Below are positions 40,647-64,000 of a stretch of DNA of 64,000 bases, one piece after another; positions within the stretch are counted from its first letter, which is position 1; the number at the start of each line of letters is the position of its first letter. The position numbers were made by a program, and so were the translations under genes. A model generated the notes under the pieces. The model made no database searches. It was not told where the DNA came from and worked only from the letters and a program-made list of their open reading frames with translations. This DNA comes from Ophelia neglecta (Eukaryota): contig OZ260666.1 of assembly GCA_965285935.1 (NCBI GenBank), positions 43,152,001 to 43,216,000 on the forward strand, read 5' to 3'.

Positions 40647-43600
40647 TTACTCGGTACTGCATACCGACCGAGGGTGTTCTAACATGGATACTTTGAGACC
40701 TAGGTTTTCATCCGCGTGGTTTTCATTTCCATGGTTTACAAACGCATGGTTTTCACTCCCGTGCATTTCATTGTTGCTGTGGTTTTCACTCTCTTGGTTG
40801 TCATTGCCACTGCACATGGCTCTCGCCTGCGGGCTTCTTGTCCTAGACGGCAATATAAGAAAAGATCAAATTAGAGAGAAAACGTTCAAAATTGTGAAAA
40901 TGGAACTACCATGCAGAAGTATAAAATAAAAATAAGACAGCAGACTTATTAGTTGATGAGGGCGAAAGGTAGGTTTAACACGGCCTTTTTTGTAGTCATA
41001 TCACTGGTTTAAAAAAAAAATGCTTTTCATATTTATTTTACCAGTTAAGAATGAAATGTAGAAAGTAATCTTTTTTTTAGATTATATTCAGCACAAAAAC
41101 CCTTACTGTGCATCCACTGAGTCCACATTATAACCCTTAGGTCCATTACTTTTGTCTTTCTTGTTGTGAATTAAAAAGCCAAGTTTTAGGACTACAAAAG
41201 ACTTTTGCTTGTAATGAGACATTTGCAGTAATTTTTTTCAAATTATGATACTGTAACATTGACAACAAGGCTTATCTCCGCGGTTCCCCCCCAAAAATAT
41301 CTAAATAATATTCAAGCGTCCTTGTATCTTTCACAAACATATAATCGCGAACTTGCTGCCATCCGTACTTAGACATGACATTTTACTGTATTTTTCGACT
41401 TACGGGTACTTTATTTAATAAGAGAAAAATAAAAACATACAAAGACAGAGGAATGTAGACCGCATTTGTTCGTTTTCCACCATTTTGTACTTGTCTTCTC
41501 ATCAACTTACAAGCCAAAGCTCCACACACACCACCAATAATACCGGAAATGGCTACAGCCAGACCTAACACTAGGAATCAAACAATATATCTACCACTAT
41601 CCCTATCTAGTACAATTAAACATGGATTATCAAAATTTTGAGGTTTAAATTATGCGAAAATCAATCCAGATTTTGATGAATCATTCTGATTGTAATACAT
41701 GCGAAATTTATCTTCCTGAACGACAGTTAAGGGAATGAAAGGTTAGCAACAGACGTTTGAAGGAACCATTTTTATAAAATCTTAGCATTTGATTCGCTAG
41801 AAAAATAGGTCAACATCGAAAATTAAAGTGTGTTTCAATGTGTTCTCAATGAAGCTAGGTCCTACCCTCCGTTGTATAAGTAGTTCTCGAGTTCCAATTT
41901 CGACTAGACTCACTGTTCCCGATTAAGTTGACGCTACGAGCTGTTGGATTGCTTTTCGAAGCTGAGCAACCGTCAATCGCACACGTCAGGCTACAAGATG
42001 GCGTTCTCGGGCATGTCACACTACATTCGGAACAGGCGCAGGCTGGACAAGATATGTTTGGCGATGCTGGGCAAGCCGTTTGACAATCAGGGCACGTGAC
42101 ATTCATTTTTGGACAGGAGAGATTACAGTCGGGACAAATGTTATGTGCGCTGGGACAATCCAGTTGGACATTAGGACATTTGCAATCCGGGCATGTGAAG
42201 TCTAGCATTGGACAAATCAGTTTACAATCGAGACAGGTAAAGTTAAACAAGGGGGTGGGGATGAATGGCGGTGTAGCGGTAGGGGGTTCGATTGTTTGGT
42301 CGTGCCTTGTTGTGGGGACAGGATCGGTTGTTTGGACAGACTCGGTTGCTGGCTCAATTGTTGGAATAGTTTTGTTAACAGTGCAGAATCTAAAACTGCA
42401 CCAGGCTTGCCGTGGATAGTTTAGCTGGTATATATAAAAATTTCCCTGGTCGGACGGACACAGCTTCACCTGAAAGAAAGAAACAAATGCTCAAGACTTG
42501 CTATACATCTTTATGTTATAGGGGGCCCTATTATGTAGTAATAATAAGTGAAAACGCCCGTAGAAGTGTTACCCTCCAACTGACCTTAACGGCCAGTGTT
42601 TTGTAACAACAGTTTTGACTCCAATGAATACACGCCCTCATGGCCTTCACCTCAAAGTCTAAAAGAAAAGAAATGTATTAAAGCTCAAAACGTGACAGTT
42701 GTGTTTGCTTGTCAATCATATTTCAAAATTTGTTTAAGACTGTTCAATAGAAAATATGCTGTTTTTTTATAGCAAGTTTGTTAATGTCGGGTGTACAATT
42801 TCTTCTGTTTATGCCTATTATGTATTGAGAAAGCATACTCTTGAAAACCCGGTTAGCATACCTAACCTTTTGCTACTTTTAATGAAAACTAAACTAGGCC
42901 TATTCGCATTTGTTTTTAAGAGTTTGAACCCAAGTCTGGTGTAGATTAGGGTACATTATTTCATTTATTCGTGACCATTTTAACGTTAAATCAAATAAAA
43001 CATTCTTTTAAAAAATACAGTTAGACGTAATTTTTGGTAATAATCATTGCGAAATAAATGAGAAGACGAAAAATATACCATCTTCAGCAATATTTTTGGC
43101 ATATAGGTCTATTGGCCAAAATCCGTTGACCTCCCTTAAGGAAGCTAAAATTACACTTAGCACATAGTAGCAGCAGTAGTATAAAATGCACATTAAACAA
43201 ATATTTATATTACTGTTTAGGATTTCTTGGTGTTTCTTACTTGTTGGATGAGTGCCGTTAATGAAAGCCGTGGCGTGGGTTTGGCAGCGCCTGGCGGGAG
43301 GACAGGTCTCCGGGATCATGTCTCCCCCCGTCCCGTTAAACCGATACCACGCCTCTGCAATGAAAATAAGTTATGGCTTTTCCTTTGTACCTAGCGAAGC
43401 ATTCCCCTAATTTCATTTTTAACCTACCTCGGTCAATAATTTGGTTGTTATCACATTGTGGTGAGCTACTGTCAGTGTTTAAGATACTCCTGGTCGGATC
43501 GTCGAATGTGGTGTGCCCTCCCTCGGAGCAAATGTCTTGACCAGTAGCCAAAACTGCGCAAAATCAAATTTAGCCAATAAAAACCATAAGCCTAATATAT

Positions 43601-44006
43601 ATACAGTGAAACCTGTGAATTGAGACCACCCAAGGGACTGGACAATACTGGTCTGATTGTGGAGATGGTTAGTTTAGACAGGCATTTTTACATTGAAAGC
43701 TCAGTATGGTCTTAGGAGGTCAGAATATAGAGGTGGTCTTTAAGTCAGGTTCCACTGTATTAAGATCAAATTTATTCAAGTTAAACCAACACAAATTCAG
43801 TTTCCAATTTTAGATGAGCATACTATCACGAATAATTATGCTAATTATTTTAAGAGAGAAGTTGTACAGAAAACACTGAAGTTCTTTCAGTGCCACCAAT
43901 TCTATTTGAAAAATGAAGCGAAAAGAAGGCTTTATACTGCCTTATAAATTGACTTTTTACCTGATATCAACATCAAAAAACATCCAATTTTTTCGGGTCG
44001 AGCCAT
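40647..44006 (-). CDS. D8C (UMOD/GP2/OIT3-type) domain, Cys-rich-stalk single-pass membrane protein, paralogue A (~429 aa)
   Basis: Exons 44006-43961, 43553-43428, 43354-43241, 42658-42585, 42469-41866, 41570-41441, 40842-40647 (1290 nt, one frame, GT-AG). D8C pattern: C..DPTRS..CD..WYRFNGTGGDMIPETCPPARRCQTHA..INGTHP..CIHWSQNCC..VKLC..FYIYQL..C.FRFC. Hydrophobic N-terminus; TM VLGLAVAISGIIGGVCGALAC. Confidence 0.9.
43604..43757. mobile_element. Tc1/mariner-type MITE in intron 1 of paralogue A
   Basis: TA|cagtgaaacctgtgaattgagaccacc ... ggtggtctttaagtcaggttccactg|TA. Confidence 0.8.
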
Positions 44007-46421
44007 GAGTAGAGTCTATCGGTCCACTGTTTAACTTTAAATCTCTAAGCCTAATAAAGGAATTACTTCAATTTACTATAATACATTGCGTAGTAATATA
44101 GCTCCATAGCTAGCTAGGTGGCGTATCAAGTATAGCTTCAATAACATTTGAGTACCATGAAGCTAGCCCTTACTTGGTCCATTAACGAATTCCAGAACAT
44201 CACATGACATCCGCTCATTGTTTAGAGGTTTAGACACCATGAAATTAGACCTGATTTTGGGAGATGAATCTATCACCAACATTGAAGAGGTCACATAGTT
44301 GTTAACCTACTTTGATAATAGTGTAAGATGAGCTTTTGCACTGGTAAACTATATGTTCGCATTTTTCTATATAGTTTACTGAAAATTGACATTTTCTATA
44401 TCTACATGTACTCATTTAAAAGTCTATGCTATTTTGCGGGTATATGCTTTTATATAGCTTATGTTTTTAATTAGTAACTATAAATAACCATTTATGATTG
44501 TAATGAAATAAATGATTTTATCGGTGCTGGGCTTAGACCTTGGCGGTTGTTTACCTTTAGTATTCCCTTTGTTTATTTATTTATCTCACGCGCCAAATTC
44601 TTATCTATTTCGCACAATGCATTGGTGTAATTATTGTAATCTCGGGGGGGGGGCGTGATTCTCGCCGTCTCCTCCTGGCCAATCAGGAGCCAGGGTTTTT
44701 ATCCCTTCCGGTTTTGTTCTCCAGTAAATCGGTCATTTCTTCAGCTTACTCACAGCGATCAGACGTGCTAAAATTCTTCAAAACCCCCCTCCATCCTCCC
44801 CTGCTTCCCCCTGTATTTGCTAACCCCGCCTAGGTCTACGCTCTCCACCACCCTAGTTTGTCTTAAACAGGTACTTTTTCTTGTGGAACTGTAATTAGGT
44901 AGATTTGCTATTCTGTAAGTGTAATGAGTTGTCTTAGATTGGTCTTAAATATGTACTGTTCTCTTATAATGCTGTATTGAACTAGATCTGCTAATTTCTG
45001 TAAAGTATGTTTAGTGGTAAGATTTGCCTTAATTTTATGTATTGTCTATTCTTAGTTTACATGTGCCCATTTTACCCACACAGACTTGTATAAACTACCT
45101 ATAGAGACTGTTATGTAATCCTATGCTAAGGTAAATTGTGTATATATATTGTGTGTTTTTTATGGTGCTGTAAATAAACTTTGTCAAAGTTGAGAACTCA
45201 TCAACCTTGGCCTTTTCAAGCTTACCCTCTCTTATGTTTTAAGTCCAGTGCTACGATAAATAGACATAGGTTGTTGACTATACAATACGTTCATACGTAA
45301 CGAAAGTATAGTTGTTGCAAACAGTGTGTTCCACTAGACCTATATGTATATTTTTCTGTTTTCATACATTTCCTTAAATAATTTTTTCCACTGATTGGTT
45401 TAGTTTAAAGATACATGTACCTGTAAACCACAGTTACGCGAGACGCTTGTATAACTAATTGTACATAGGTATCTTGTTATACATAGGTAGTTATACATAT
45501 CGGCTGTGAACCTCTATAGATATAAAGTAGTAGATGTTCCGTTTATCGAAGAACCACGGCAATGAATGTGAGGTTTACCCTGCCAATTAAATTTGTTGGA
45601 AGGGAAATAGAAAAAAATCGAATGCAATTTAGCACTAAATAATGGTGATTTTCAAAGAAAAATCGACAGAAACATGAAGAAGGTTGATTGTTGAGATAGT
45701 TACTTTTTTGCGTGCCTAATGGCTCAATTTAGTAAATCCTATCGGGATTTTTAAGGGACAATTTTGGATGAATATTTCTGGTTACCGTTGATGTTTATTT
45801 GGATTCAAATAGCTCTATAAAGTATTGGGTTTAAATATCGAAAATTTGAGACACCATTACATAGATCCATCTTTACTAGACGCAATACCGTTCACTGACT
45901 TAAAATCAGTCAATTAGTGAATGAGTTATAAATTCTTAGCCTGAACATTTAGACGCCCTCTGTAAAATACAAACATAATATGCTTTGTATGAATAACATT
46001 TATTGGATTGAGTTTCCTTCTTCTTTGATTAAATAAGAAAAGTATTTTTAGTTTAAACACGCAGCAGACTAAATTGCATCCAGCATTCATGCCAAGGCCA
46101 AGTTTAAGGTAACCGTAAGTATTCACTCTATACAAATCAAACTTTTTATGTCGTCACAAGCTCACAACTATACCAAAAGCTTGACGACTCGTGAACAGTT
46201 TCGTTGTCCTTTGTCACTACATTGAAGATTTTTTGTTCGTAATAATTCAAGCATCTACAAATAAGGAAAATTGCTGCAAGAAATGAAAACATTAACTGCC
46301 AAGATTAACTGGAAATTATAAACTCTCGTTAAACAATTTATACCGAAAGTCCAGAAACGATTGTTGACATGACATACATGTACGTATACCATTAAGTGAA
46401 GGCTATTAAGAAGGCTTAAAT

Positions 46422-46757
46422 GGGGGGGGGGGGGGTGCACTCCCTATACCATGGTAGGAACAAGTGTCCCGTTATTGACCACCCTTTTTCGCCAAATGGT
46501 GTAGAGTTTTGACCCTTTCTTGTAGGAGTATACTCGATGCATAAGTTTCGACCCCCCACTTTATGGAAAAATATAATGCTTTTCCTCCATCAATTTGAGA
46601 TGGGCCATAATTTTGATCCCTGTTATCATCCTAAATGTAGGACCCCATTATTATGTAGAGTTTGACCCCCTAAATTTGGGCCTCAATTTTGAGGTCGCTC
46701 TTTTTTTTCAAAGGTTTGCAGCGAAATATGTACCCCCCCCCCCCCCCCCCCCCCCGG
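46422..46757. mobile_element. Non-autonomous element bounded by poly-G and poly-C
   Basis: G-run+tgcac at the left, gtac+C-run at the right, internal repeated ttgacccc motifs. Confidence 0.45.
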
Positions 46758-48034
46758 TTTATTTGTAATTCAGATATATTCTAGCCGATGAAGAATCTTA
46801 CACCATATCTGTGCTACGAACAACGGCCTTGGCACTTAACATTAACCAATTTATTCCAATAATTCACCCCGTCATTTAAATATATATTTGAGAACTTCTT
46901 TCCATGTCCTTATATTTTAGTTAGTTTCTAAAGGTACAGGTGAAAATCAGAGCGAAAATTAACTGCTCAGATAGCCTACTAGTGAACATGCCCATTTCAC
47001 TTGTTGAAATTCTTACTTTGCTGTCACTTTACAAAAGAAGTAATATTTTCATATACGGATAAAAATAAAAAAGACGAACATATTGCAATGATCGGTGCCA
47101 TCCAATTAAATAAGCTTTTACATGTTGCAAAATAATTAATTTGATTAACAACAATTATGGTGCAATCCAATGAAAATCAAATGAATTCTGATGATAGTTA
47201 TCAATATGGTTTATTATCATTTAACATAGAGGATTGAATAATATTAATGGCCATTTACTTTATTTCAAACAAAAGCAGTGAAAAAATTGAGAAGCGAAAA
47301 ATTTGGCAAAGGCAATAGAAGGAGTGGAAATATCAGAGTTAATCGCAAAAGTGGGGAACTAGAAACAGCCACACCACAGATGAAGTCAGAAAGATTTAAG
47401 GTGTGAAGAAAAATGGGTACCACGTTTGCCACATGTCACACCAGCTACCATACAATAGTTATGCATAAGCCTAAATAAAGTCAGTTATGTTTTTAAATTC
47501 ATAAAATGCTGGTTTAGTTATAACCTTTAGAGTAAATTTATAGATCTTAGTATGTAATGACCTAAGATCTAACGTCTTTAATTCAAAGCGCATCAAGCCT
47601 TCAAATATCTAGTCCAATAGGCAAAGTTAATAACCGTTGGCGTAATGTGTAATATTGAACAGAGGCTTTGCATTGGTTATGGGACCATTCGCTATATCGA
47701 TCTTAAGACCACTGTGATCACGGTAAAAAAGAGCTGAAAGCTTTGAAACAATAACATTGGTAGCGCAATTTTATATAAATACTGAAAGGTTTCGTATTCA
47801 AGCAATTACATGATATGCAAATGGGAAAGTAAAAAAAAAACTACATTCATGGGTTGAATTGTAAACAAATGACGTTGTCGCTATAGAACGTTTGAGGGGC
47901 CCAAGTCAAATCTTTATTCAAACAGTTTGATTTGTATTGGACGTATTGAGTTAATTGTATATGAATGAGTGGAGCGATTGTGTCAAAAGGATCAAATATA
48001 ATTATAGTGTTACAATGTTACTAGCTGACTGTAC

Positions 48035-51000
48035 TCAGTTATTGCAAACAGATCGAGGGTTTGCTAACATGAGAAGTTCGTCATACGGGTTCTCACCGGC
48101 GTGGGTTTCACTCCTTTGGTTGTCGATGGCACTGCACATTCCCCCGGCTGGAGGGCTTCTCGGCCTAGACAACAGAATCAGGAAAAAAGGGATGAACGTT
48201 TCATGTGTGAAAATAGCTATATACACGTCTGTTCCCCAAATACTAGAAAGAACCTTTTTGGAATTGTACCCATATTGTTTTTAATAATTACTACAGTTTC
48301 CAATGTACCCTTGACACGTTGCAGTTATTTTGACAATAAGGATCGTTAAAGGACATAGGCTTTATAGGTTGTCATATTCTATATAACACACTGTGTCTCA
48401 CTTTCCCTCATTGCCTGCTATAAATCGACTTAAGAAAAGGAAATGTATACCTACGAAGATGTGGGTCTGGAGTTCGAACCTGCTCGCCACCCGCCATTCC
48501 GCTTTTTCCTATCACTAACGAGCTTGGAAAGCAAACCTCCGCACACACCACCGAGTATGAATGACAGGGCAATAGCCAGGCCGAGCACTGAAATGTAATT
48601 CAGATAAAACCAAGAAGGCTGTCATTTTTCAGAGGCAATTATACCAAACCATGTACATGCCGCACCAACCAGTTTCTGTGATACGTCGTGTATCTATCTT
48701 AAAGTTGGGGATTCGTAAACGAAATCGACCGAAATGCAGATTACCTGAGCCATCAGCAGAAACAGTTAAACAAGTGAATCCGTTATTAAATACTATTTAT
48801 GTCTATTTCTAAAACACAAACTAAGAGTCCATAGACAAGCGTGCTCCTCTTTTTTGAATTTTTTTAAAAATAATATAGTTCGCCTAAAACTTTTAATTAT
48901 AAGCAAAGTATTCCTAACTAGTTATATTCTTTGGAAGTCAATTTTGATCGGTAGGCGTACACTTTTCTTTAGATAAGTCTTATTGGCCATGTTTCAACAT
49001 TGTAAAGTGTTTATGGCAATAAAAACCTGTTGATTCCAAAAACTTGCTCATTAATTTTAAATTCTATTAATAACAATGCTACTCAAATACAACAACAAAG
49101 GTCTACAGGCACACGAGTTTCACAATTTGTTAGTAGAACTTCATTATGGTAGGCTATTTTTGTCCTTCGTATATTGTTTTTATATTAGGATGACAATAAT
49201 TAACTATAGCCTTTAAATAAGATCCAGTTAACAATATGATTAGCAAAATGGATAAATGTTTACCTTCTGAAGAGTGAATCATGCTCCCATTCCCAGCAGG
49301 CTTAGGACTATTGTGGGCGATGAAGGTACTGCTCCGATGGTCTGCTGTTTCACCTTGGGATTCTGAGCAGCTGACACTCGGGCACGTCAGGTTGCACCCA
49401 GGCGGCCTCGAACAGGTAACACTACAGGCTGGACAATCGCAGGCAGGACAGGAGATGTTAGGAAGTGCTGGGCAAGTCGTCTGGCATGCAGGACACGTGG
49501 TCTCAGCCTTCGGACAGGAAAGATTACATGCGGGACAGAGGTGCTCAACTTTGGGACAAGTCAGTTGGACATCAGGACATTTGCAGTCGGGACAGGTGAA
49601 ATTTAGCTTTGGGCAAGTTAGTTTGCAATCAGGACAAGTAAAATTGAAGTAGGGGTTGGAGAACGAGGGAGGCGTAGGGCTCGGAGGCTCAATGGTGGGG
49701 GCAGTGTTGTTAACAGTGCAAAATCTAAAACTGCACCAGGAGGGCGTTGGGTAGTTAAGTTGGTAAACATAAAAGTTTCCCTGGTCGGAAGGGCACAGCT
49801 TCACCTGAAATAAAACCAAAACATAGGCTTATGCTTTTGAATGGCTTATGATTCCTTTGATTTTTGTGAGAAATGGACGTGAGGAGTTTAGAGGCGACTG
49901 ACCTTAACATCCAATGTTTTGTAACAACATCTGCTACTCCAATGAATACACGCTGTCATGGACTTCACTTCAAAATCTAAAAGAAATGACAAAATGTCAT
50001 AATTATTTTGACTGGGTCATTTATAACGTTGAGATTGTCCTATAGGATGCTCGCAATCATTCTTTTTACAAGTTATGCCAAGAGTGTATTGTTTGAACTG
50101 TGTATTGGTTTTTGCCTATATTTATAACGAGCTCTGAAATAAAGTTGAACTTCTTTAAAAGATTTGCCATTGGCTAATACTGAATGGGCATAATGATAAA
50201 GTAAAGTTATAAATACTAACTGGTGGGATGGGTGCCGTTGATAAAAGCCGTGGCGTGTGTACGGCAGCGGTTCTTTGGAGGACATGTCTCCGGAATCATG
50301 TTTCCTCCCGCCCCAGTGAATCGATACCACATGGCTAGGGTATACAAACTCTTTTAATACGATTAATTATATTAGTGACATTTCTTTTGTAATGGTGGGA
50401 AATATTAAAGTATTAGGCCTCTCATAGTAGAAATTGAATAACAAAGACAAAGCTCATTTTTCGGCAGGGAACCTGCGATGTTTTTCTCTATGTATCAACA
50501 TCTTTAATATTATGCACATGTAGGCTGAAAATTGAATGCGTCGTTCCTCAGACACCATACTATTTCACCTACCACGGTTAATAGTGTTGCCATCACATTG
50601 TGTTCCACTGGAGACGGTGTCCAAAATACTCCTAGACGGGTCGTTTATGACGGTGTAACCCCCTTCGAGGCAAACATCTTGACCTTTCGCGGTCACTTCA
50701 TCGATAACAAGTTAAACAGATATATATTAGAATTAAAATGAGTTCATGTTTTGCGATTGCCATATTTGAAATAGCACTAAAGTATTTTATATCTCGGCTG
50801 AGAAAGGTCTAAAAATTAGCTGTTCAAAGTCCTTCAAAATGTTAATTTCAAATTGAATAATGTACATTGAAAACTGTGAATAGAAACCACCCAATTAACT
50901 GGAAAATAAAGAACTTAGTATGGACGTGGTCTCATTTGAAATTTGTGTACCCTGATGACGGCTGTATCAGTCGAAAGCTCGGAGAATATATCCTTTTTAC

Positions 51001-51223
51001 ACCTACTTGGATCTTATTTCTCTTTTATTCTATTTAGACAGGTTGTTTTACATTAAAAGAGTACAGTCTTTTCTTCCCATTAGTTGCCTGAATACACATG
51101 TTGTTTGAATATAGATGTGTTCTTTAAGGCAAGTTTTACTGTATTGGCGATAAAGATCGTATGAAATTACAGCTCACCTGTTATAACTATCAGAACAGAC
51201 GCAATATGTCCGAATCGACCCAT
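48035..51223 (-). CDS. D8C domain, Cys-rich-stalk single-pass membrane protein, paralogue B (~386 aa)
   Basis: Exons 51223-51178, 50695-50573, 50334-50221, 49976-49903, 49804-49264, 48587-48455, 48164-48035 (1161 nt, one frame). Same exon phases and motifs as paralogue A (WYRFTGAGGNMIPETCPPKNRCRTHA, CIHWSSRCC, VKLCPSDQGNFYVYQL). Confidence 0.9.
50865..51142. mobile_element. Degenerate Tc1/mariner-type MITE in intron 1 of paralogue B, carrying a ~95-bp insertion
   Basis: TA|cattgaaaactgtgaatagaaaccacccaa ... ctttaaggcaagttttactg|TA; aligns by eye to 43604-43757 outside ~50938-51031. Confidence 0.6.
50944..50988 (+). ncRNA. Minimal type I hammerhead ribozyme motif (Penelope-like/retrozyme type)
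   Basis: cc CTGATGA c GGCTG-tat-CAGTC GAAA GC TC gg: conserved core boxes, 5-bp stem II, palindromic AGCT in place of stem III, short stem I. Confidence 0.65.
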
Positions 51224-52965
51224 GTCTACAAAGTCGTCGCCTTGTTTAGATTCCAACCACTAATTCTAGAAATACTCAAACACAGTGAGAAGAACTGCTT
51301 ATTATATTTCAGTATCCTGGATTTGCCAGCTGTCAGTGATAGCAAGAGATCAGAAAACCGCATGACACGAATCTATTGTTATGGGAGTCAAACTTCAGAA
51401 ATCTGACCTGTCCCTCCATTGGAGGAGAAGAAATATCCATCATCAGTGTGAACTGATGACATAGATGACATGACGCTCAATTAATAACTGATTAATATCA
51501 TTTGCACTCGTGGCTGGCAGTGCATTGCTGTGTTGGTCTAGCTTCCCTGCATAGATTCTTGAATTTTCATACAATTGGGCTTTAGGTTATTATATTACAA
51601 TAGTCAGGCTTCTAGTTATCCAATGCCACAAAAAATAGTTTGCCGAGTGTCTTGCACTAAATGGATACTAATGTCAAATACTTTTTGAGAGAATCAATAG
51701 GTTTAGCATGCGAGCGACTAAAAAAAGAGACCCATTAAATTTGTGTTCAGTATGACTGTTTAGATTTCTATTGATTAATAAGAAAGTGGGTCCGCTTCTT
51801 ATATTCGGGTTTAGTATTTTTTATACCTAATAACTCGTGCTAAAAAATATTGGTGCATATTGCGATCTTTATCCAGAGGACATTTTAACCTGACCATTAA
51901 CATAAAAGAAAACACATCAGTGATGGCTTCATTAACTCATGAAGGCCATGCACGCATGAAATTAAGTTCTCAGATGAAACAGCATAACTACATGAAAAAA
52001 AACTGTTTATGTTTGGCAAGTAACTCGTAACCCGTTTGTCAGTAGTGCCTCGTATACCATAGTTGTACATTTGACGCAGAAGAAATGAATGGTTAATAAT
52101 ATCAGCACATTGTTTACCATTAGAATATTTCGGAAGGAAAAAATTAACTAACAATATAGAATATATTTAAACAAGTTGTTGGTTCTGAATTTCATGTCCT
52201 AATGATATTTCACCCTTGGGTGGTCTTAATTCACAGGTTCCACTGTATTGTTACATTTAGTTGTTAATTGAAATGAAAATGCATACGTGATAAAAATACC
52301 TAGATGCAGTAAGCTTATTGAATTGATTTTTATCATATGCTTTCTGAAATTCTTAATATATACCAATTAACGAGTAACCATTCTCAATGGCATAAACGGT
52401 TTTATCCACTAGCCTGATAAGCGGCATTTAAGCACTGTGGTTTTTTGAGTTATCTGCCTATTGTGAATTAGATCCATCGATATAAACGATGAGGACAAAA
52501 CTGATGGAATAAAGCCAAGCAATATGATTAAATAAATAGTTGATATCTGTAGGCCTACATGTTTAAAGAACCCTTATTGAGAGGAAATTCATGCTTACAA
52601 ATATATGTTCGCAGGGAGTGTTTCCGGCAGATCTAATAACAATTCTTAGAGACCTTTTCCTTTATTTTATTTAATAAGGGAAATACAAGTGTTACCCCAT
52701 ACCTGTAATATAGGCAATAATTGAAATAAAAGCTTACAGATGAAGAATATATATAGGGCGAACAGAGTATTTTTTAATAATACCTTCTAGTTTTTCGTAG
52801 GAAACCGAGTGCTCGAGTCACTTCAATACCTCATATAAACCTATATGAATGTGGTCTGCCCATGTCTGAGAGGAATGAATCAAAATACCTTCATCGGCTT
52901 AATCCTTTAAATTTACTGTCCATGATAACCAAGTGGTTGTGACACTATTTATCTTACAGCTACTA

Positions 52966-57495: not shown

Positions 57496-57945
57496 CAAAG
57501 ACCGTGTAGGCTTAAAGGCCTCATGTGAGGTTCGAACATTGTATTGAGACTGATAGCCTTATCAGCTTACACGGTGTTTCATGGGGGTCCAGTTGATAAT
57601 CAACAAATGATACAATCATTTTATTAGCGAGGAAAATGTACAAAGTATATAATCCAAAACACCAGTCAGATTTAAACATAGAAGAGGGAAACTAAACCAA
57701 TCCTACGGCATATATGTACTCGACATTTACTTCGATAGCTAAGATGTATGGGCAGTTTAAATTGTATAAAGCCTATTAACAACTGTCAACAACAGATAGC
57801 ATATCAATATTATAAATGCACTATACCATATATATTCCAGGCCATTACGGAAGAGTAACCTGTGGCCTCGTTCGTGGTTTTACCAAATATCGTTTATTTT
57901 AAACTCCAGACGCGGTTAGTCTGCTGCATTTGAACAGGCAGTAAC

Positions 57946-59624
57946 ATGGCAAAGGTAGCCGAAGCTGCAGTAGTGAATGAGCTAAAATGGGAGAAACTGC
58001 CTAAGACAGTGTACAACAATGTTGAAGGTCAGCTGACTGTCTACCTCCCTGGGTTCACATACAGCGATGTCGATAATAAAGGCATGTAGTAATTTATAAT
58101 CGCAATACCTAATATTGATTAATCATTGCCCGCCTAGGCTATGGATTATAGTGAAACCCCCACGTCAGTGTTGCACAGTTAGCCCCAAGACAGGCGGTGC
58201 ACATGAAAATTAAAGGAAATACAAATGAACCTATGTCAAGGTTTTGAAATTATTTCAAATGTTCAAGTAAAATAGTTCCAGTTTTCAAACTAAAAATTCC
58301 TTTTAGGTTAAGTAAGAAAATTGAAAAAGAAAACTGGTAGGGTGCGAATCATTTTTTCTTTTGGAATACAAGGTTTTCATCTTTCCAGCTATTTCGAATA
58401 CATTGTCCTGCGTGCAAAAATAAACAGTGGGGTCCCCATGCACTTTATATGGAGGTACTGTGGAACCGAGGTTATCGCTCATAATAATGGAGTCATATTT
58501 ATAAAATCTAATTCATTGACCACCTAGGCTATTGATTATAGGATAAATGTGGATTTTTTCATTGAGCTTAACAGAAGGAAATATCAATTATTTTGACTTT
58601 TGTCTATGCTGCTAAGGTATAAAATCAAATATTTGAGGATCTAACTTCTTTTTATTTTACATTATTTTGCCATCAATAAAAAGGTTATAAGTTACGACTA
58701 TTTGCATGTTGTTTTGTAACAGTATATGAGGACTATTTTGTAACACAAGTGTATATGTATATCTTGATTACACATAGTGAGGTAGGTTTGTTAATTTCAA
58801 AACTAACACAAGATCATGACTGTAACAATTAAAAGAAATGTTCATATTTTCACTCAGGTAACCTGACGCTGTGGTCTGCAGCCAGTTATGCCGAAGCCGG
58901 AAGATCACATATTTATTTCGACCCAAAGCTACCTTTTTGTGAAACATTTCAAGAAGGCTTTTTTTATCTGGCATCTGTCATATACGAATTCACGCCACAT
59001 TTCTATAATAAAGCATGTAGATACAACCCGCTACGAGATGAAGTCAATGTTACTAATATTAGAAAACGTTCATTAACGCAATATGATAAGATCTGGTCGA
59101 CAGTTACTGGGGAACTGTTGTATACCTCCACGGCAGTTCTTGTACATGTTGACATGACGTCACGAAAACCTTCGAGTCTACCTCCATCGTTCAAGGAGAT
59201 TTTTGGAGCGAAGGCTCTTTCAATGCCAGGCGTTAAAATACAGAGGATCGATAGACCGACACGGACCTTCATTGTTCCATACCAAATTCAATGGAGCGAT
59301 TCTGACTTCTTGGAACATTCCAATCAGTCCTCTTACGTCCGTTATTGCTACAACGCCGCCCAGACCCTAGTGAGGCTAAACGTATTTAAAAACATCCAAG
59401 GAGAGTTGGGCAATTATAGGGTGTGTAGAGTTACTTGTCTTTACTTGAATGAAACAAAGCCCGGGGAGATTGCCAATATACACGTGTGGGAAGATGAATC
59501 CAATAAGTGGAACTTGTATTTTCACATAGAAATAAGCAAATTTCTAAGGTATCAGGGCTCCATTGAATTCCAAGATCCGGGTCACGAGAAAGATCGCCAA
59601 AAATCACAAAAGGCGAAACTGTAA
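57946..59624 (+). CDS. Double-hotdog acyl-ACP/acyl-CoA thioesterase-like protein, paralogue C (~300 aa)
   Basis: Exons 57946-58081 and 58858-59624, open frame. Motifs YSDVDNKGNL..WSAASYAEAG and IQWSDSDFLEHSNQSSYVRYC resemble the two D-x-D-x-x-x-H-x-N type hotdog motifs. The donor is GC (AAG|GCATGT). Confidence 0.8.
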
Positions 59625-61621: not shown

Positions 61622-62935
61622 AAGCAGTGTATCCTAAATGCCTTATGTGAGGTTTTGAAAAAAACTTATTTAGACTTGAAAGCCTTATCAGCTTACTCTG
61701 TTTTTCAAAGTATATAAACTAAAAGCACATGTCACATTTAAACATGGAAGAGGGAACTAAACCAACAATTTATACATGTGAGAATGTATAGTGTGAAAAA
61801 ATTTAAAACTCTTTTTACTATATATAAGAAAACACCTGATCACCTTCGTGCAAATCCAGTTGCAAAAATCACTGATCTGAGCATACAATGAATCTAATGT
61901 CTAATATCTTAAATATTTATCGTGAAAAATCTTAGATTGCCTCTCTCGCATGCCTTCACTACTCTTAGCCGTGTAGTCGTACGCTGCGAGATTAATTAGT
62001 CCTACTTACAGATACTTATATGCGGTTCTTTATTTCAAAACGGGATCTTGAGTATTTTGTCATATCATGCACTAAATTGTATATTTATTTAGTTCTTAGA
62101 AACTTTTATATTCAGGGGTGTAAAGATGAAACTGTTCTGTTAAATTTCACGTTATATTCAAGATGGGATCAGCCATTAACCTAAAAAACAATGTGAAAAT
62201 TACTTGCTGCTTACAAAGTAATCGTTCACATGGGGAGGTGTTTATATTTGAGATGGTTTAGTGGCCGACTAACACACCCTCCAATTCTACACCTGTAAAA
62301 AGCCAACGGACTAGTTCCATAATCATGGCCATGTATTTTCAGATGCTTTTCGATTTGTCAGCGATTTGTTAGTTATCATATCGGCGACTATGAATCGTCA
62401 GCAATGTGATAGTTTATCACATCACCGACAATGATGCGCATACCGTGCACTGCCCAGCTTAGGTCATACAAGACTGACCACCTTAGTTTTGAAGCCGATA
62501 TTAGAGTACACATATTTATGTATGATAACCTTCGTATTAATTACACACATGTTTCAATGCATGTTCTTAATGGGTTTACTTCATTGACATTCAAAGAGTC
62601 TTTTTTTTTAAGCCTTGGGCCGCCGGCCCTCGTTTCCCCCTTTACGCAGATATTCATTCTTATGTCCTGTACGGCATACAAGCACTTGACCTTTACTTTG
62701 ATAGCTAAGCACTAAGATGTACGCGCGGTGTAACTTGTTAAGCCTATTGCCGCCTGTCATGTGAGCAACAGATAACAATTCAATATTATAAATGCGCTAT
62801 AACATATGTTCCAGGCCCATTCGCAAGAGTAACTCGTGACCCAATACGTGGTTTTCACCAAATACCGTTTATTTTAAACTCCAGACGCTGCATTTAGTGG
62901 AACAGCTTGTCCGCTGCATTTGAACAGGCAGTAAC

Positions 62936-64000
62936 ATGGCCAAGGTATCCGAAGCTGCGGTAGTGAATGAGCTAAAATGGGAGAAACTGCCTAAGACAGT
63001 GTACAACGAGGAGGAAGGTAAGCTGACTGTCTACCTCCCTGGGTTCACATACAGCGATGTCGATAAGACAGGTAAGTAGTATGTTTATTATCGCAATAAC
63101 TAATATTGATTAATCATTGCCCGCCTAGGCTATTGATTATAGGATATAGGTTGATCTATTAAGTGAGCTTAACAGAAAGAATTATCATTTATTATGATTT
63201 TTGTTTATGCTGACTAGTGACTAGTACAAAAGTATAAGCTCAAATATTTAAGGATCTAAATTGATTATTATACATAATTTTGCCTTCAATAAAAATGTTG
63301 TAAGATAAGACTATTGGAATGTTGTTTTTAACTGTTTGTAAAACTTATATGTTTACCTTGTTTTCATATAATGTAATAGGCATGTTTATTTAAAAATGGT
63401 TACAAGTATCAAAAAAAGTTATGTAGCAATTAAATGAAATATTCATATTTTCATCCAGGTAACCTGACGCTGTGGTCTGCAGCCAGTTATGCCGAAGCCG
63501 GAAGAGCACAGATTTTCTTTGACCCAAAACTACCATTTTGTGAAACATTTCTCAAAGGCTATTTTTATATGGCGTCCGCTATGTACGAATTCACGCCACA
63601 TTTCTATGATAAAGCATGCAGATACAACCCGCTAAGTGATGAAGTCAATGTTACCAATATTGGAAGAAGTTCATATACGCAATATGATAAGATCAGGTCG
63701 ATAGTTACAGGGGAAATGTTATTTACCTCCACTGTTGTTCTTGTACATGTTGACAAAACATCACGAAAACCTTCCAGTCTACCTCCATCGTTCAAGGAGA
63801 GGTTTGGAGCGAAGGTTCTTTCCTTGTCAGGCGATAAAATACAGAGGATCGATAGACCGACACGGACACACATCGTTCAATACCAAATTCAATGGAGCGA
63901 TTGTGACTTCTTCCGACATTCCAATCAGTCCTCTTACGTCCGTTATTGCTACAACGCCGCCGAGACCCTAGTGAGGCTAAACGTATTTAAAAACATCCAA
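62936..64000 (+). CDS. Double-hotdog thioesterase-like protein, paralogue D (3' end beyond the window)
   Basis: Exons 62936-63071 (CAG|GTAAGT) and 63459->64000, open to the window end and highly similar to paralogue C; motifs NIGRSS and IQWSDCDFFRHSNQSSYVRYC. Confidence 0.85.

What the first reader, a model, noticed from the sequence alone, without database searches (positions are those of the whole stretch)
40647..51223. Tandem pair of orphan receptors: uromodulin-type D8C head on a Cys-repeat stalk, no ZP domain
Seen: two intact 7-exon genes with signal peptide, D8C, Pro/Thr linker, 21-Cys region, Ser-rich spacer, Gly-rich TM helix (GxxxG-type) and cytoplasmic tail. Known: in UMOD, GP2 and OIT3 the D8C domain comes with EGF and ZP modules, and in UMOD/GP2 it presents a glycan decoy for bacterial FimH. 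Inference: a lineage-specific surface receptor or decoy family, possibly mucosal or immune, in which the Cys stalk replaces the ZP polymerisation module. This is my best candidate for an undescribed system in the window.
Basis: partly seen in the sequence, partly recalled or inferred. Interest (0 to 1): 0.75.

Follow-up and report, generated by a model that had tools for sequence, protein, structure and literature searches.

The report
Worm membrane proteins with uromodulin-type head
Two neighbouring worm genes encode cell-surface proteins that carry the uromodulin/GP2-type cysteine domain on a previously unseen cysteine-ladder stalk; this is a new arrangement of a known domain, and its function is unknown.

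Summary
Two minus-strand, seven-exon paralogues sit in tandem: gene A at 44006-40647 (429 codons) and gene B at 51223-48035 (386 codons). All introns are GT-AG and the phases are identical in both genes.

Exons 3, 4 and the start of exon 5 match human GP2 and UMOD D8C/D10C in order (E 1.7e-8, 0.012, 0.15). After the domain come:
- a Pro/Thr linker;
- a 94-residue region with 21 cysteines, identical spacing in both copies and a 7/14-residue period;
- a Ser-rich spacer;
- a GxxxG transmembrane helix;
- a tail of roughly 66-87 residues.

Ka/Ks is 0.10-0.47 outside the signal peptide, so both copies are under constraint. I found no EGF or ZP exon.

The beta-hairpin and both FimH-decoy glycan sites (UMOD N275, GP2 N65) are missing. 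The tail has no known signalling domain. This genome also has about a dozen other D8C loci, none near a ZP match, so lacking ZP is normal here.

The cysteine stalk has no relative in this genome or in the large protein libraries. No RNA data were available. Spliced-protein searches and folds were left out by rule, so the distribution in other species remains untested.

The scan had noted the Cys region before, on this same window only (s1-745848).

The parts
43961..44006 (-). Gene A exon 1: ATG plus 15 codons and 1 nt; hydrophobic core of the signal peptide
   Evidence: only phase-1 ATG exon with a good GTAAAA donor and a hydrophobic core near the homologous place; same 46-nt length as in gene B; KD 9-residue mean 2.5
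43428..43553 (-). Gene A exon 2: end of the signal peptide and the N-terminal part of D10C with two Cys (presumed C1, C2)
   Evidence: No tool match. By reading: Y/H-T-x-x-x-D-P-x-R-S after the first Cys and C-D before WYRF, as in the GP2 text printed
43241..43354 (-). Gene A exon 3: D8C core (WYRF..ETC..RC..NGTHP; C3, C4)
   Evidence: Pfam PF23283 E 0.047, profile positions 6-36
42585..42658 (-). Gene A exon 4: D8C middle (C5, C6, C7)
   Evidence: Pfam PF23283 E 0.0046, profile positions 43-57
42383..42469 (-). Gene A exon 5, first part: D8C end (C8, C9, C10)
   Evidence: coordinates; 27 of 31 residues identical to gene B, whose copy aligns to GP2; Ka/Ks 0.10
42248..42382 (-). Gene A exon 5: Pro/Thr-rich linker, 45 aa
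   Evidence: 23 of 45 residues are P, T or S
41966..42247 (-). Gene A exon 5: 94-aa region with 21 Cys, 7/14-residue period, 4 CPxC motifs
   Evidence: Ka/Ks 0.16
41866..41965 (-). Gene A exon 5: Ser/Thr-rich spacer, with a second in-phase donor whose last exon nt is 41914
41441..41570 (-). Gene A exon 6: transmembrane helix with GxxxG pairs, basic stop-transfer stretch, start of the tail
   Evidence: KD 19-residue mean 2.12
40647..40842 (-). Gene A exon 7: cytoplasmic tail and stop codon
   Evidence: shared motifs RSP..MCS..DNQ.SE.H and ML..PRSVC in the alignment
51178..51223 (-). Gene B exon 1: ATG and signal-peptide core
   Evidence: KD 9-residue mean 2.9
50573..50695 (-). Gene B exon 2: end of the signal peptide and D10C N-terminal part with two Cys
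   Evidence: no tool match
50221..50334 (-). Gene B exon 3: D8C core
   Evidence: PDB GP2 7p6r E 1.7e-8, UMOD 6zs5 E 5.3e-8; Pfam PF23283 E 0.0056
49903..49976 (-). Gene B exon 4: D8C middle
   Evidence: GP2 E 0.012; Pfam PF23283 E 0.014
49718..49804 (-). Gene B exon 5, first part: D8C end
   Evidence: GP2 8xc5 E 0.15 and 7p6r E 0.16, the top two of 4 listed
49649..49717 (-). Gene B exon 5: Pro/Thr/Ser linker, 23 aa
49367..49648 (-). Gene B exon 5: 94-aa region with 21 Cys and 6 CPxC motifs
49264..49366 (-). Gene B exon 5: spacer, 34 aa
48455..48587 (-). Gene B exon 6: transmembrane helix and start of the tail
   Evidence: KD 2.22
48035..48164 (-). Gene B exon 7: tail and stop codon; AATAAA lies 117 nt downstream at 47918

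Best explanation
These are two old tandem duplicates, both kept by selection, that encode single-pass type I membrane glycoproteins of an annelid-like animal.

Shown:
- Each gene has a hydrophobic N-terminal exon.
- Each has a uromodulin/GP2-type D8C domain, with all eight D8C cysteines in register.
- Each has two more cysteines upstream, where D10C C1 and C2 would lie.
- There is no beta-hairpin, no EGF and no ZP module.
- The domain is followed by a Pro/Thr linker, a 94-residue 21-Cys region of 7/14-residue period with four to six CPxC motifs, a Ser-rich spacer, a GxxxG helix and a short tail.

Inferred:
- The D10C head is held away from the membrane on an O-glycosylated, disulfide-rich stalk.
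- It acts as a surface recognition or adhesion module, or as a glycan-presenting one. The N-glycan sequon NGT, equivalent to UMOD N232, is kept.
- The protein does not polymerise as ZP proteins do. It more likely pairs through the GxxxG helix and the cysteine ladder.
- The tail acts in sorting rather than in enzymatic signalling.
For: - Gene models with matching phases.
- Collinear GP2/UMOD matches of exons 3, 4 and 5, and Pfam D8C matches on exons 3 and 4 of both genes. The rough sum of exon scores is 33.3 bits for B and 31.9 for A, against a 27-bit cut-off.
- GP2 cysteines C3 107, C4 113, C5 138, C6 145, C7 146, C8 157, C9 172 and C10 177 (PMC8930769, main text read) each align with a worm Cys.
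- Ka/Ks is 0.28, 0.15, 0.31, 0.21, 0.43 and 0.22 for exons 2-7, with Ks about 0.5-1.3.
- Cys spacing is identical in both copies.
- The hydrophobic helix has a KD mean of 2.1-2.2 and is followed by basic residues.
- No ZP match on this contig, and no family match in 10 flanking open stretches.
Against: - No RNA run holds the locus, so splicing and expression are unconfirmed.
- Exon 2 matched nothing with any tool, so D10C C1 and C2 rest on reading alone.
- The AF2 model of exon 5 was useless, with pLDDT 30.8.
- The D10C fold could not be modelled, because joining exons was ruled out.
- No orthologue was found, so constraint is shown only between the two paralogues.
- Function is inferred from architecture alone.
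Confidence: 0.6

Rival explanations
1. The D8C head presents a high-mannose glycan that traps bacterial mannose-binding adhesins, as in UMOD and GP2. Here the head would be tethered to the cell, or shed from it.
For: - The head is a true D8C.
- One UMOD/GP2 sequon, NGT (UMOD N232), is kept in both genes (alignment).
- A further sequon follows C10 (NNT in B, NKT in A).
Against: [quoted passage not shown] UMOD N232 carries a complex, solvent-exposed glycan.
- In the worm genes the N275-equivalent residue is Gln.
- The N65 sequon is absent.
- The protein starts 4-5 residues before the first Cys, so there is no hairpin and no groove.
- No polymerisation module is present.
Confidence: 0.12
2. This is a signalling receptor. 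Ligand binding at the D10C head is passed through a GxxxG-mediated dimer to tail motifs that recruit cytoplasmic partners.
For: - Type I topology, GxxxG pairs and a tail of roughly 66-87 residues.
- Conserved tail motifs RSP..MCS..DNQ.SE.H and ML..PRSVC.
- Gene B has a Tyr-containing NPYDELL stretch.
Against: - No Pfam domain in the tail.
- The Tyr motif of B is absent from A (alignment).
- Exon 6 has the highest Ka/Ks of exons 2-7, at 0.43.
Confidence: 0.15
3. The genes are not functional as modelled. They are untranscribed relics, or the models are wrong.
For: - No RNA evidence.
- No homologue outside the genome.
- The signal-peptide exon is poorly conserved, with 5 of 15 residues identical.
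Against: - Both reading frames are intact over seven exons, with 12 of 12 GT-AG introns and matching phases.
- Ks is about 1 while Ka/Ks is 0.10-0.47 outside exon 1.
- All 31 extracellular Cys are kept.
Confidence: 0.05

Closest known systems
Decoy module (beta-hairpin + D10C, formerly D8C) of human GP2 and uromodulin (PDB 7p6r, 6zs5; PMC8930769)
   Same: Exon 3 has 19 of 35 aligned residues identical to GP2 (my count on the alignment). C3-C10 are in register. The WYRF and NGTHP motifs, and the V/I-Y pair before the N275 position, are kept.
   Different: - No beta-hairpin.
- No sequon equivalent to N275 or N65.
- No EGF or ZP module.
- No GPI-type end. Instead there is a linker, a Cys ladder, a TM helix and a tail.
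OIT3/LZP (D8C + EGF + ZP). That it carries D8C is recalled; for PMC7909667 I saw only the search listing and the start of the abstract.
   Same: A D8C-type head.
   Different: OIT3/LZP carries a ZP domain (abstract listing). The worm genes do not.
Other D8C loci of the same genome (for example C12:42.41-42.47 Mb, C2:76.26-76.28 Mb, C1:126.30-126.31 Mb, C5:40.42 Mb)
   Same: They share the D8C core. Between 14 and 19 of 34-35 residues are identical to exon 3 of the window genes. They also have no nearby ZP match.
   Different: Their D8C lies in two exons and ends in CP.AYCAG, followed by an EGF- or CBM14-like Cys motif. None has the 21-Cys stalk.
CPRCP repeats of the human IgG3 hinge (recalled from memory; analogy only, not tested)
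   Same: Short repeats with three Cys each and CPxC motifs in an extended Pro-rich segment. In the hinge they form parallel inter-chain disulfides.
   Different: No sequence relationship was tested or claimed. The worm unit is 14 residues long and carries N-glycan sequons.
Metagenomic proteins with long CPxxxTx heptad arrays (P0094, P0099, P0107, P0126, P0129)
   Same: Seven-residue period with a Cys-Pro pair in each unit. The profile matches had E 1.6e-8 to 3.1e-5.
   Different: They have one Cys per heptad and no CPxC. Their N-terminal parts are different, and they have no D8C. The match may be periodic composition only.

Membership tests
D8C / D10C domain (Pfam PF23283; GP2/UMOD decoy-module domain) | Sequence match to the D8C profile or to solved D10C domains | tested here: met
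   Exon by exon: GP2 7p6r at E 1.7e-8 (exon 3), 0.012 (exon 4) and 0.16 (exon 5 start), collinear. Pfam gave 14.3-17.6 bits per exon on exons 3 and 4 of both genes. No single exon reaches the 27-bit cut-off.
D8C / D10C domain (Pfam PF23283; GP2/UMOD decoy-module domain) | Eight cysteines, C3-C10, at conserved positions | tested here: met
   Each of GP2 C107, C113, C138, C145, C146, C157, C172 and C177 (PMC8930769) aligns with a Cys of gene B. Gene A keeps all of them.
D8C / D10C domain (Pfam PF23283; GP2/UMOD decoy-module domain) | N-terminal extension with C1 and C2, which makes D8C into D10C | tested here: inconclusive
   Exon 2 has two Cys, 25 residues apart in B (22 in GP2), with C-D before WYRF. 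No tool aligned it. The resemblance to the GP2 text is by reading only.
D8C / D10C domain (Pfam PF23283; GP2/UMOD decoy-module domain) | D10C fold (nine strands, two 3-10 helices, five disulfides) | not testable with these tools
UMOD/GP2-type bipartite decoy module | Disulfide-stapled beta-hairpin before D10C | tested here: not met
   Exon 1 is the signal-peptide core. Exon 2 has only 7 residues before the first Cys, some of them signal peptide. No extra Cys pair is present.
UMOD/GP2-type bipartite decoy module | Sequon for the high-mannose glycan (UMOD N275 or GP2 N65) | tested here: not met
   Gln aligns with GP2 R165 / UMOD N275. After the first Cys, gene B reads L-E-G-G-Y-T and gene A reads S-E-G-G-H-T, where GP2 has Q-N-Y-T.
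ZP-module filament proteins (UMOD, GP2, OIT3) | ZP module | tested here: not met
   PF00100 gave 4 matches in the genome and none on contig C9. Of 10 flanking open stretches, 0 matched. The exon-wise six-frame search has limited sensitivity.
ZP-module filament proteins (UMOD, GP2, OIT3) | EGF domains beside D8C | tested here: not met
   No Pfam family on exon 5 or any other exon apart from D8C, and none in the flanks.
Mucin-like type I membrane glycoproteins (a descriptive class, not a homology family) | Signal peptide, Pro/Thr/Ser-rich segment, single TM helix, cytoplasmic tail | tested here: met
   Composition and hydropathy by script. No signal-peptide or O-glycosylation predictor was available.

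The most novel reading that the evidence does not exclude
The 21-Cys, 14-residue-period CPxC region is a new kind of extracellular stalk. It would be a hinge-like ladder of symmetric inter-chain disulfides that zips two parallel chains (A-A, B-B or A-B) into a rigid covalent dimer, aided by the GxxxG helix. The odd number of cysteines fits that design. The D10C domain would then be an ancient stand-alone recognition head, which vertebrates later coupled to EGF and ZP modules.
Probability: 0.15. Interest if true: 0.55.

Novelty: new variant of a known kind. Interest (0 to 1): 0.35.

Why it matters
The paper I read describes D8C as conserved in vertebrate proteins, and it places the domain in the ZP-module filament proteins GP2 and UMOD. 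This locus shows the domain in a spiralian, membrane-anchored and without a hairpin, EGF or ZP module. It belongs to a genome that holds about a dozen further ZP-less D8C genes.

That widens the known contexts of the domain. It gives a natural 'D10C only' construct for asking what the domain does apart from presenting the FimH glycan. The cysteine stalk is an unclassified, strongly constrained repeat that may be worth a structure.

It remains a lineage-specific domain shuffle with no functional data. A specialist would be mildly interested rather than surprised.

Tried and rejected
1. Word-indexed protein search with the 224-aa open frame of exon 5 of gene B. 98 candidates shared words and none reached E<=0.001. 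With residues 5-64 alone there was 1 candidate, which did not reach E<=10. The length window was 123-392 aa, so longer relatives could not be seen.

2. HMMER profile of exon 5 (A plus B) against 1.84 billion representatives. 175 proteins had E<=0.001.
   - Of the 150 listed, 135 have under 5% Cys.
   - The ones I read are AHNAK-like or TPKVE-type periodic proteins. I rejected them as periodic or compositional matches.
   - The 15 Cys-rich ones are CP-heptad arrays or translated repeats, not shown to be related.

3. The ESM Atlas gave no usable hit for exon 5 or exon 3.

4. The metagenome contig scan matched patterns at 38 places. None was confirmed.

5. The AF2 model of exon 5 with a 2-row alignment had pLDDT 30.8 and could not be used. 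No fold search was made.

6. PDB sequence search with the Cys region gave nothing below E 0.79.

7. The own-genome search with exon 5 gave 7 matches: 1 to itself, 2 to gene A, and 4 to translated minisatellites.

8. Exon 2 got no support from phmmer against PDB, from a profile against PDB, or from BLASTP against a paralogue.

9. Literature searches found no invertebrate or membrane-anchored D8C protein: 'D8C domain' (30 papers, 25 listed), 'D10C', 'D8C' + 'invertebrate' and 'uromodulin' + 'annelid' (4 papers). I saw only the listings and the starts of the abstracts. One search was badly framed and told me nothing. Subscription journals and supplements were not searched.

10. The sequencing-run search listed 3 runs of one study, none on record as RNA. 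Each holds 95-99% of the words, introns included, so they look like DNA. I did not use read laying because these runs cannot answer the expression question.

11. These are Pfam on the whole protein, a full-length database search, a fold of the D10C head or of a dimer, and signal-peptide or topology predictors.

12. In one search I tested 10 of the 24 Cys-containing open stretches listed. That is 10 of the 16 stretches outside the two gene spans. Six four-Cys stretches outside the genes and four inside introns or in other frames were not tested.
Full report
WHAT IS THERE. The window is G000:C9:43152001-43216000 of a 762-Mb, 223-contig assembly. Earlier notes of this scan call the animal an annelid worm; I did not test that. 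Six-frame reading of the minus strand, the sequences themselves and a boundary script give two seven-exon genes.

- Gene A: 44006-43961, 43553-43428, 43354-43241, 42658-42585, 42469-41866, 41570-41441, 40842-40647 (1290 nt).
- Gene B: 51223-51178, 50695-50573, 50334-50221, 49976-49903, 49804-49264, 48587-48455, 48164-48035 (1161 nt).

All 12 introns begin with GT and end with AG. The phase pattern is the same in both genes, and exons 1, 3 and 4 have the same length in both. Exon 1 of gene A was not obvious. A scan for ATG exons ending in a phase-1 donor found one with a hydrophobic core and a GTAAAA donor at 44006-43961, the same 46 nt as in gene B. Blocks of intron 1 are also conserved between the genes. 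An AATAAA lies 117 nt after the stop of B. The first signals after A are an ATTAAA about 580 nt and an AATAAA about 730 nt downstream.

THE HEAD IS A D8C/D10C DOMAIN.

- Exon 3 of B matches GP2 (7p6r) at E 1.7e-8 and uromodulin (6zs5) at 5.3e-8. Only GP2 and UMOD chains were listed (4 of 4).
- Exon 4 matches GP2 at E 0.012, and again 3 of 3 listed chains are GP2 or UMOD.
- The first 34 residues of exon 5 match GP2 at E 0.15-0.16, the top two of four listed.
- On chain 7p6r the three matches are collinear: 64-98, 106-121, 127-150.
- Pfam PF23283 matched exons 3 and 4 of both genes, which is 4 of 8 exon translations. Scores were 14.3-17.6 bits, each below the 27-bit cut-off, at profile positions 6-36 and 41-57. 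Summed roughly, they pass the cut-off.

I read the main text (part 1 of 6) of PMC8930769, which gives the GP2 disulfides. Its C3-C10 (107, 113, 138, 145, 146, 157, 172, 177) each fall on a worm cysteine in those alignments.

Exon 2 carries two more cysteines where C1 and C2 should lie. When read against the GP2 text printed, it shares Y-T-x-x-x-x-P-x-R-S after the first Cys and C-D before WYRF. No tool aligned it, however, so the step from D8C to D10C is inferred.

WHAT THE HEAD LACKS. The protein begins only a few residues before the first cysteine, so the disulfide-stapled beta-hairpin of the GP2/UMOD decoy module is absent. PMC8930769 places the FimH-binding high-mannose glycan at UMOD N275 (GP2 R165), or in GP2 at N65, in the hairpin/D10C groove.

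- In the worm, Gln aligns with that position.
- The N65 sequon is missing from both genes.
- The sequon that is kept, NGT, corresponds to UMOD N232, which the paper describes as a solvent-exposed complex glycan.

No EGF or ZP exon was found.

- PF00100 gave four matches in the whole genome and none on this contig.
- No other Pfam family matched any exon.
- Of ten flanking Cys-containing open stretches on the gene strand, none matched a family at E<=0.01. These were 10 of the 16 such stretches outside the genes listed.

THE STALK. After C10 comes a Pro/Thr/Ser-rich linker, 45 aa in A and 23 aa in B. A 94-residue region follows, with 21 cysteines whose 20 spacings are identical in the two genes. 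It has no indel, its autocorrelation peaks at 7 and 14 residues, and it holds four (A) or six (B) CPxC motifs and several N-glycan sequons. It is not a DNA tandem repeat.

It has no Pfam family and no PDB relative. It has no relative in the genome beyond the two genes: one search gave 7 matches, of which 3 are these genes and 4 are translated minisatellites. Nor has it a credible relative in the large protein libraries.

- The word-indexed searches returned nothing.
- The HMMER profile search of 1.84 billion representatives returned 175 hits.
- For the ones I read, these hits are Cys-free periodic proteins of AHNAK or TPKVE type, or arrays of CP heptads.
- No listed hit combined a D8C end with a Cys ladder.

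The AF2 model of exon 5 was uninformative, with pLDDT 30.8. The two Atlas look-ups and a metagenome scan were blank.

MEMBRANE ANCHOR AND TAIL. Exon 6 opens with a 19-20-residue hydrophobic segment with a Kyte-Doolittle mean of 2.1-2.2. The 1.6 threshold is recalled. The segment has GxxxG pairs and is followed by basic residues. Counting from the end of that segment, the tail is about 87 aa in A and about 66 aa in B. It has no Pfam match. The paralogues share a membrane-proximal RSP..MCS..DNQ.SE.H motif and a C-terminal ML..PRSVC motif. A Tyr-containing NPYDELL stretch occurs only in B.

SELECTION. Nei-Gojobori estimates were made exon by exon. Ks is 0.46-1.30 for exons 2-7, so the duplication is old.

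- Ka/Ks for exons 2-7: 0.28, 0.15, 0.31, 0.21, 0.43 and 0.22.
- Within exon 5: 0.10 for the D8C end, 0.21 for the linker, 0.16 for the Cys region and 0.47 for the spacer.
- The signal-peptide exon is the exception at 1.8, on 15 codons.

Both copies are therefore maintained as coding genes. These are two-sequence estimates at near-saturated Ks and should be taken as rough.

CONTEXT IN THE GENOME. PF23283 found 22 exon-level matches at about 16 other places. Examples are three tandem copies on C12, four modules 1.9 kb apart on C2, two on C1 and one on C5. The two window genes score lower and were not among the 22.

- These other genes encode the D8C in two exons.
- They end it with CP.AYCAG and follow it with an EGF- or CBM14-like motif.
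- They share 14-19 of 34-35 core residues with the window genes. That is about as many as human GP2 does (19 of 35 by my count).
- None lies within 14 Mb of a ZP match. The ZP search is exon-wise and probably insensitive.

The window pair is thus a separate branch of a D8C family that is expanded and, as far as seen, ZP-less in this animal.

READING. The structure is that of a type I membrane glycoprotein that displays a D10C-like head on a glycosylated, disulfide-rich stalk. I take it as a surface recognition, adhesion or glycan-presenting molecule that may pair through its GxxxG helix and its cysteine ladder. All of that is inference.

- A signalling role has nothing beyond topology in its favour.
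- The odd number of stalk cysteines and the CPxC motifs recall the IgG3 hinge. This is from memory and was not tested. It suggests a covalent parallel dimer, which I give as the boldest reading still open.

LIMITS.
- No RNA run was on offer. One search listed three runs of one study that hold 95-99% of the words, introns included, so they look like DNA. I did not use read laying for that reason.
- Spiralian genomes and proteomes could not be searched with spliced proteins, and the word-indexed searches were blind above 392 aa. 'No relative found' therefore applies to exon 5 only.
- Literature searches for D8C or D10C outside vertebrates found nothing relevant in the listings. Subscription journals and supplements were not covered.

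Noticed in passing
G000 C12:42408165-42471096; C2:76263201-76277290; C1:126298992-126309729; C5:40419791-40420479; C9:62981872-62982036; C9:72930362-72930911 (loci L008-L026): There is an expanded set of other D8C genes. Their D8C lies in two exons and is followed by an EGF- or CBM14-like Cys motif. Three are tandem copies about 31 kb apart on C12. Four are modules about 1.9 kb apart on C2, which may be one multi-D8C gene. No ZP match is near any of them.
   Followed up: partly
window 57934-59621 and 62924-64000 (+): Tandem pair of thioesterase-like genes. The 263-aa open frame matches 4HBT_2 at E 2e-6. The second copy runs off the window.
   Followed up: partly
window 43594-43647, 43723-43761 (gene A intron 1); 50856-50908, 51107-51145 (gene B intron 1); 52213-52248: Two short blocks of intron 1 are 81-85% identical between the paralogues. 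A 36-nt inverted copy lies upstream of gene B. This is either a regulatory element or a repeat fragment.
   Followed up: no
window 41914 (gene A exon 5): A second in-phase GT donor (GTGAGT) would drop 16 codons of the Ser-rich spacer, giving a possible alternative isoform.
   Followed up: no
proteins P0094, P0099, P0107, P0126, P0129: Metagenomic proteins with dozens of CPxxxTx heptads at their C-terminal ends. Of these, only P0129 was sent to Pfam, and it matched nothing.
   Followed up: no
L004 (C7:8382744-8383103), L005, L006 (C12:55951421-55951738), L007: Minisatellites that translate into Cys-Pro or Cys-Gly-Tyr periodic open frames of up to 267 aa. They mimic Cys-repeat proteins in six-frame searches.
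   Followed up: yes
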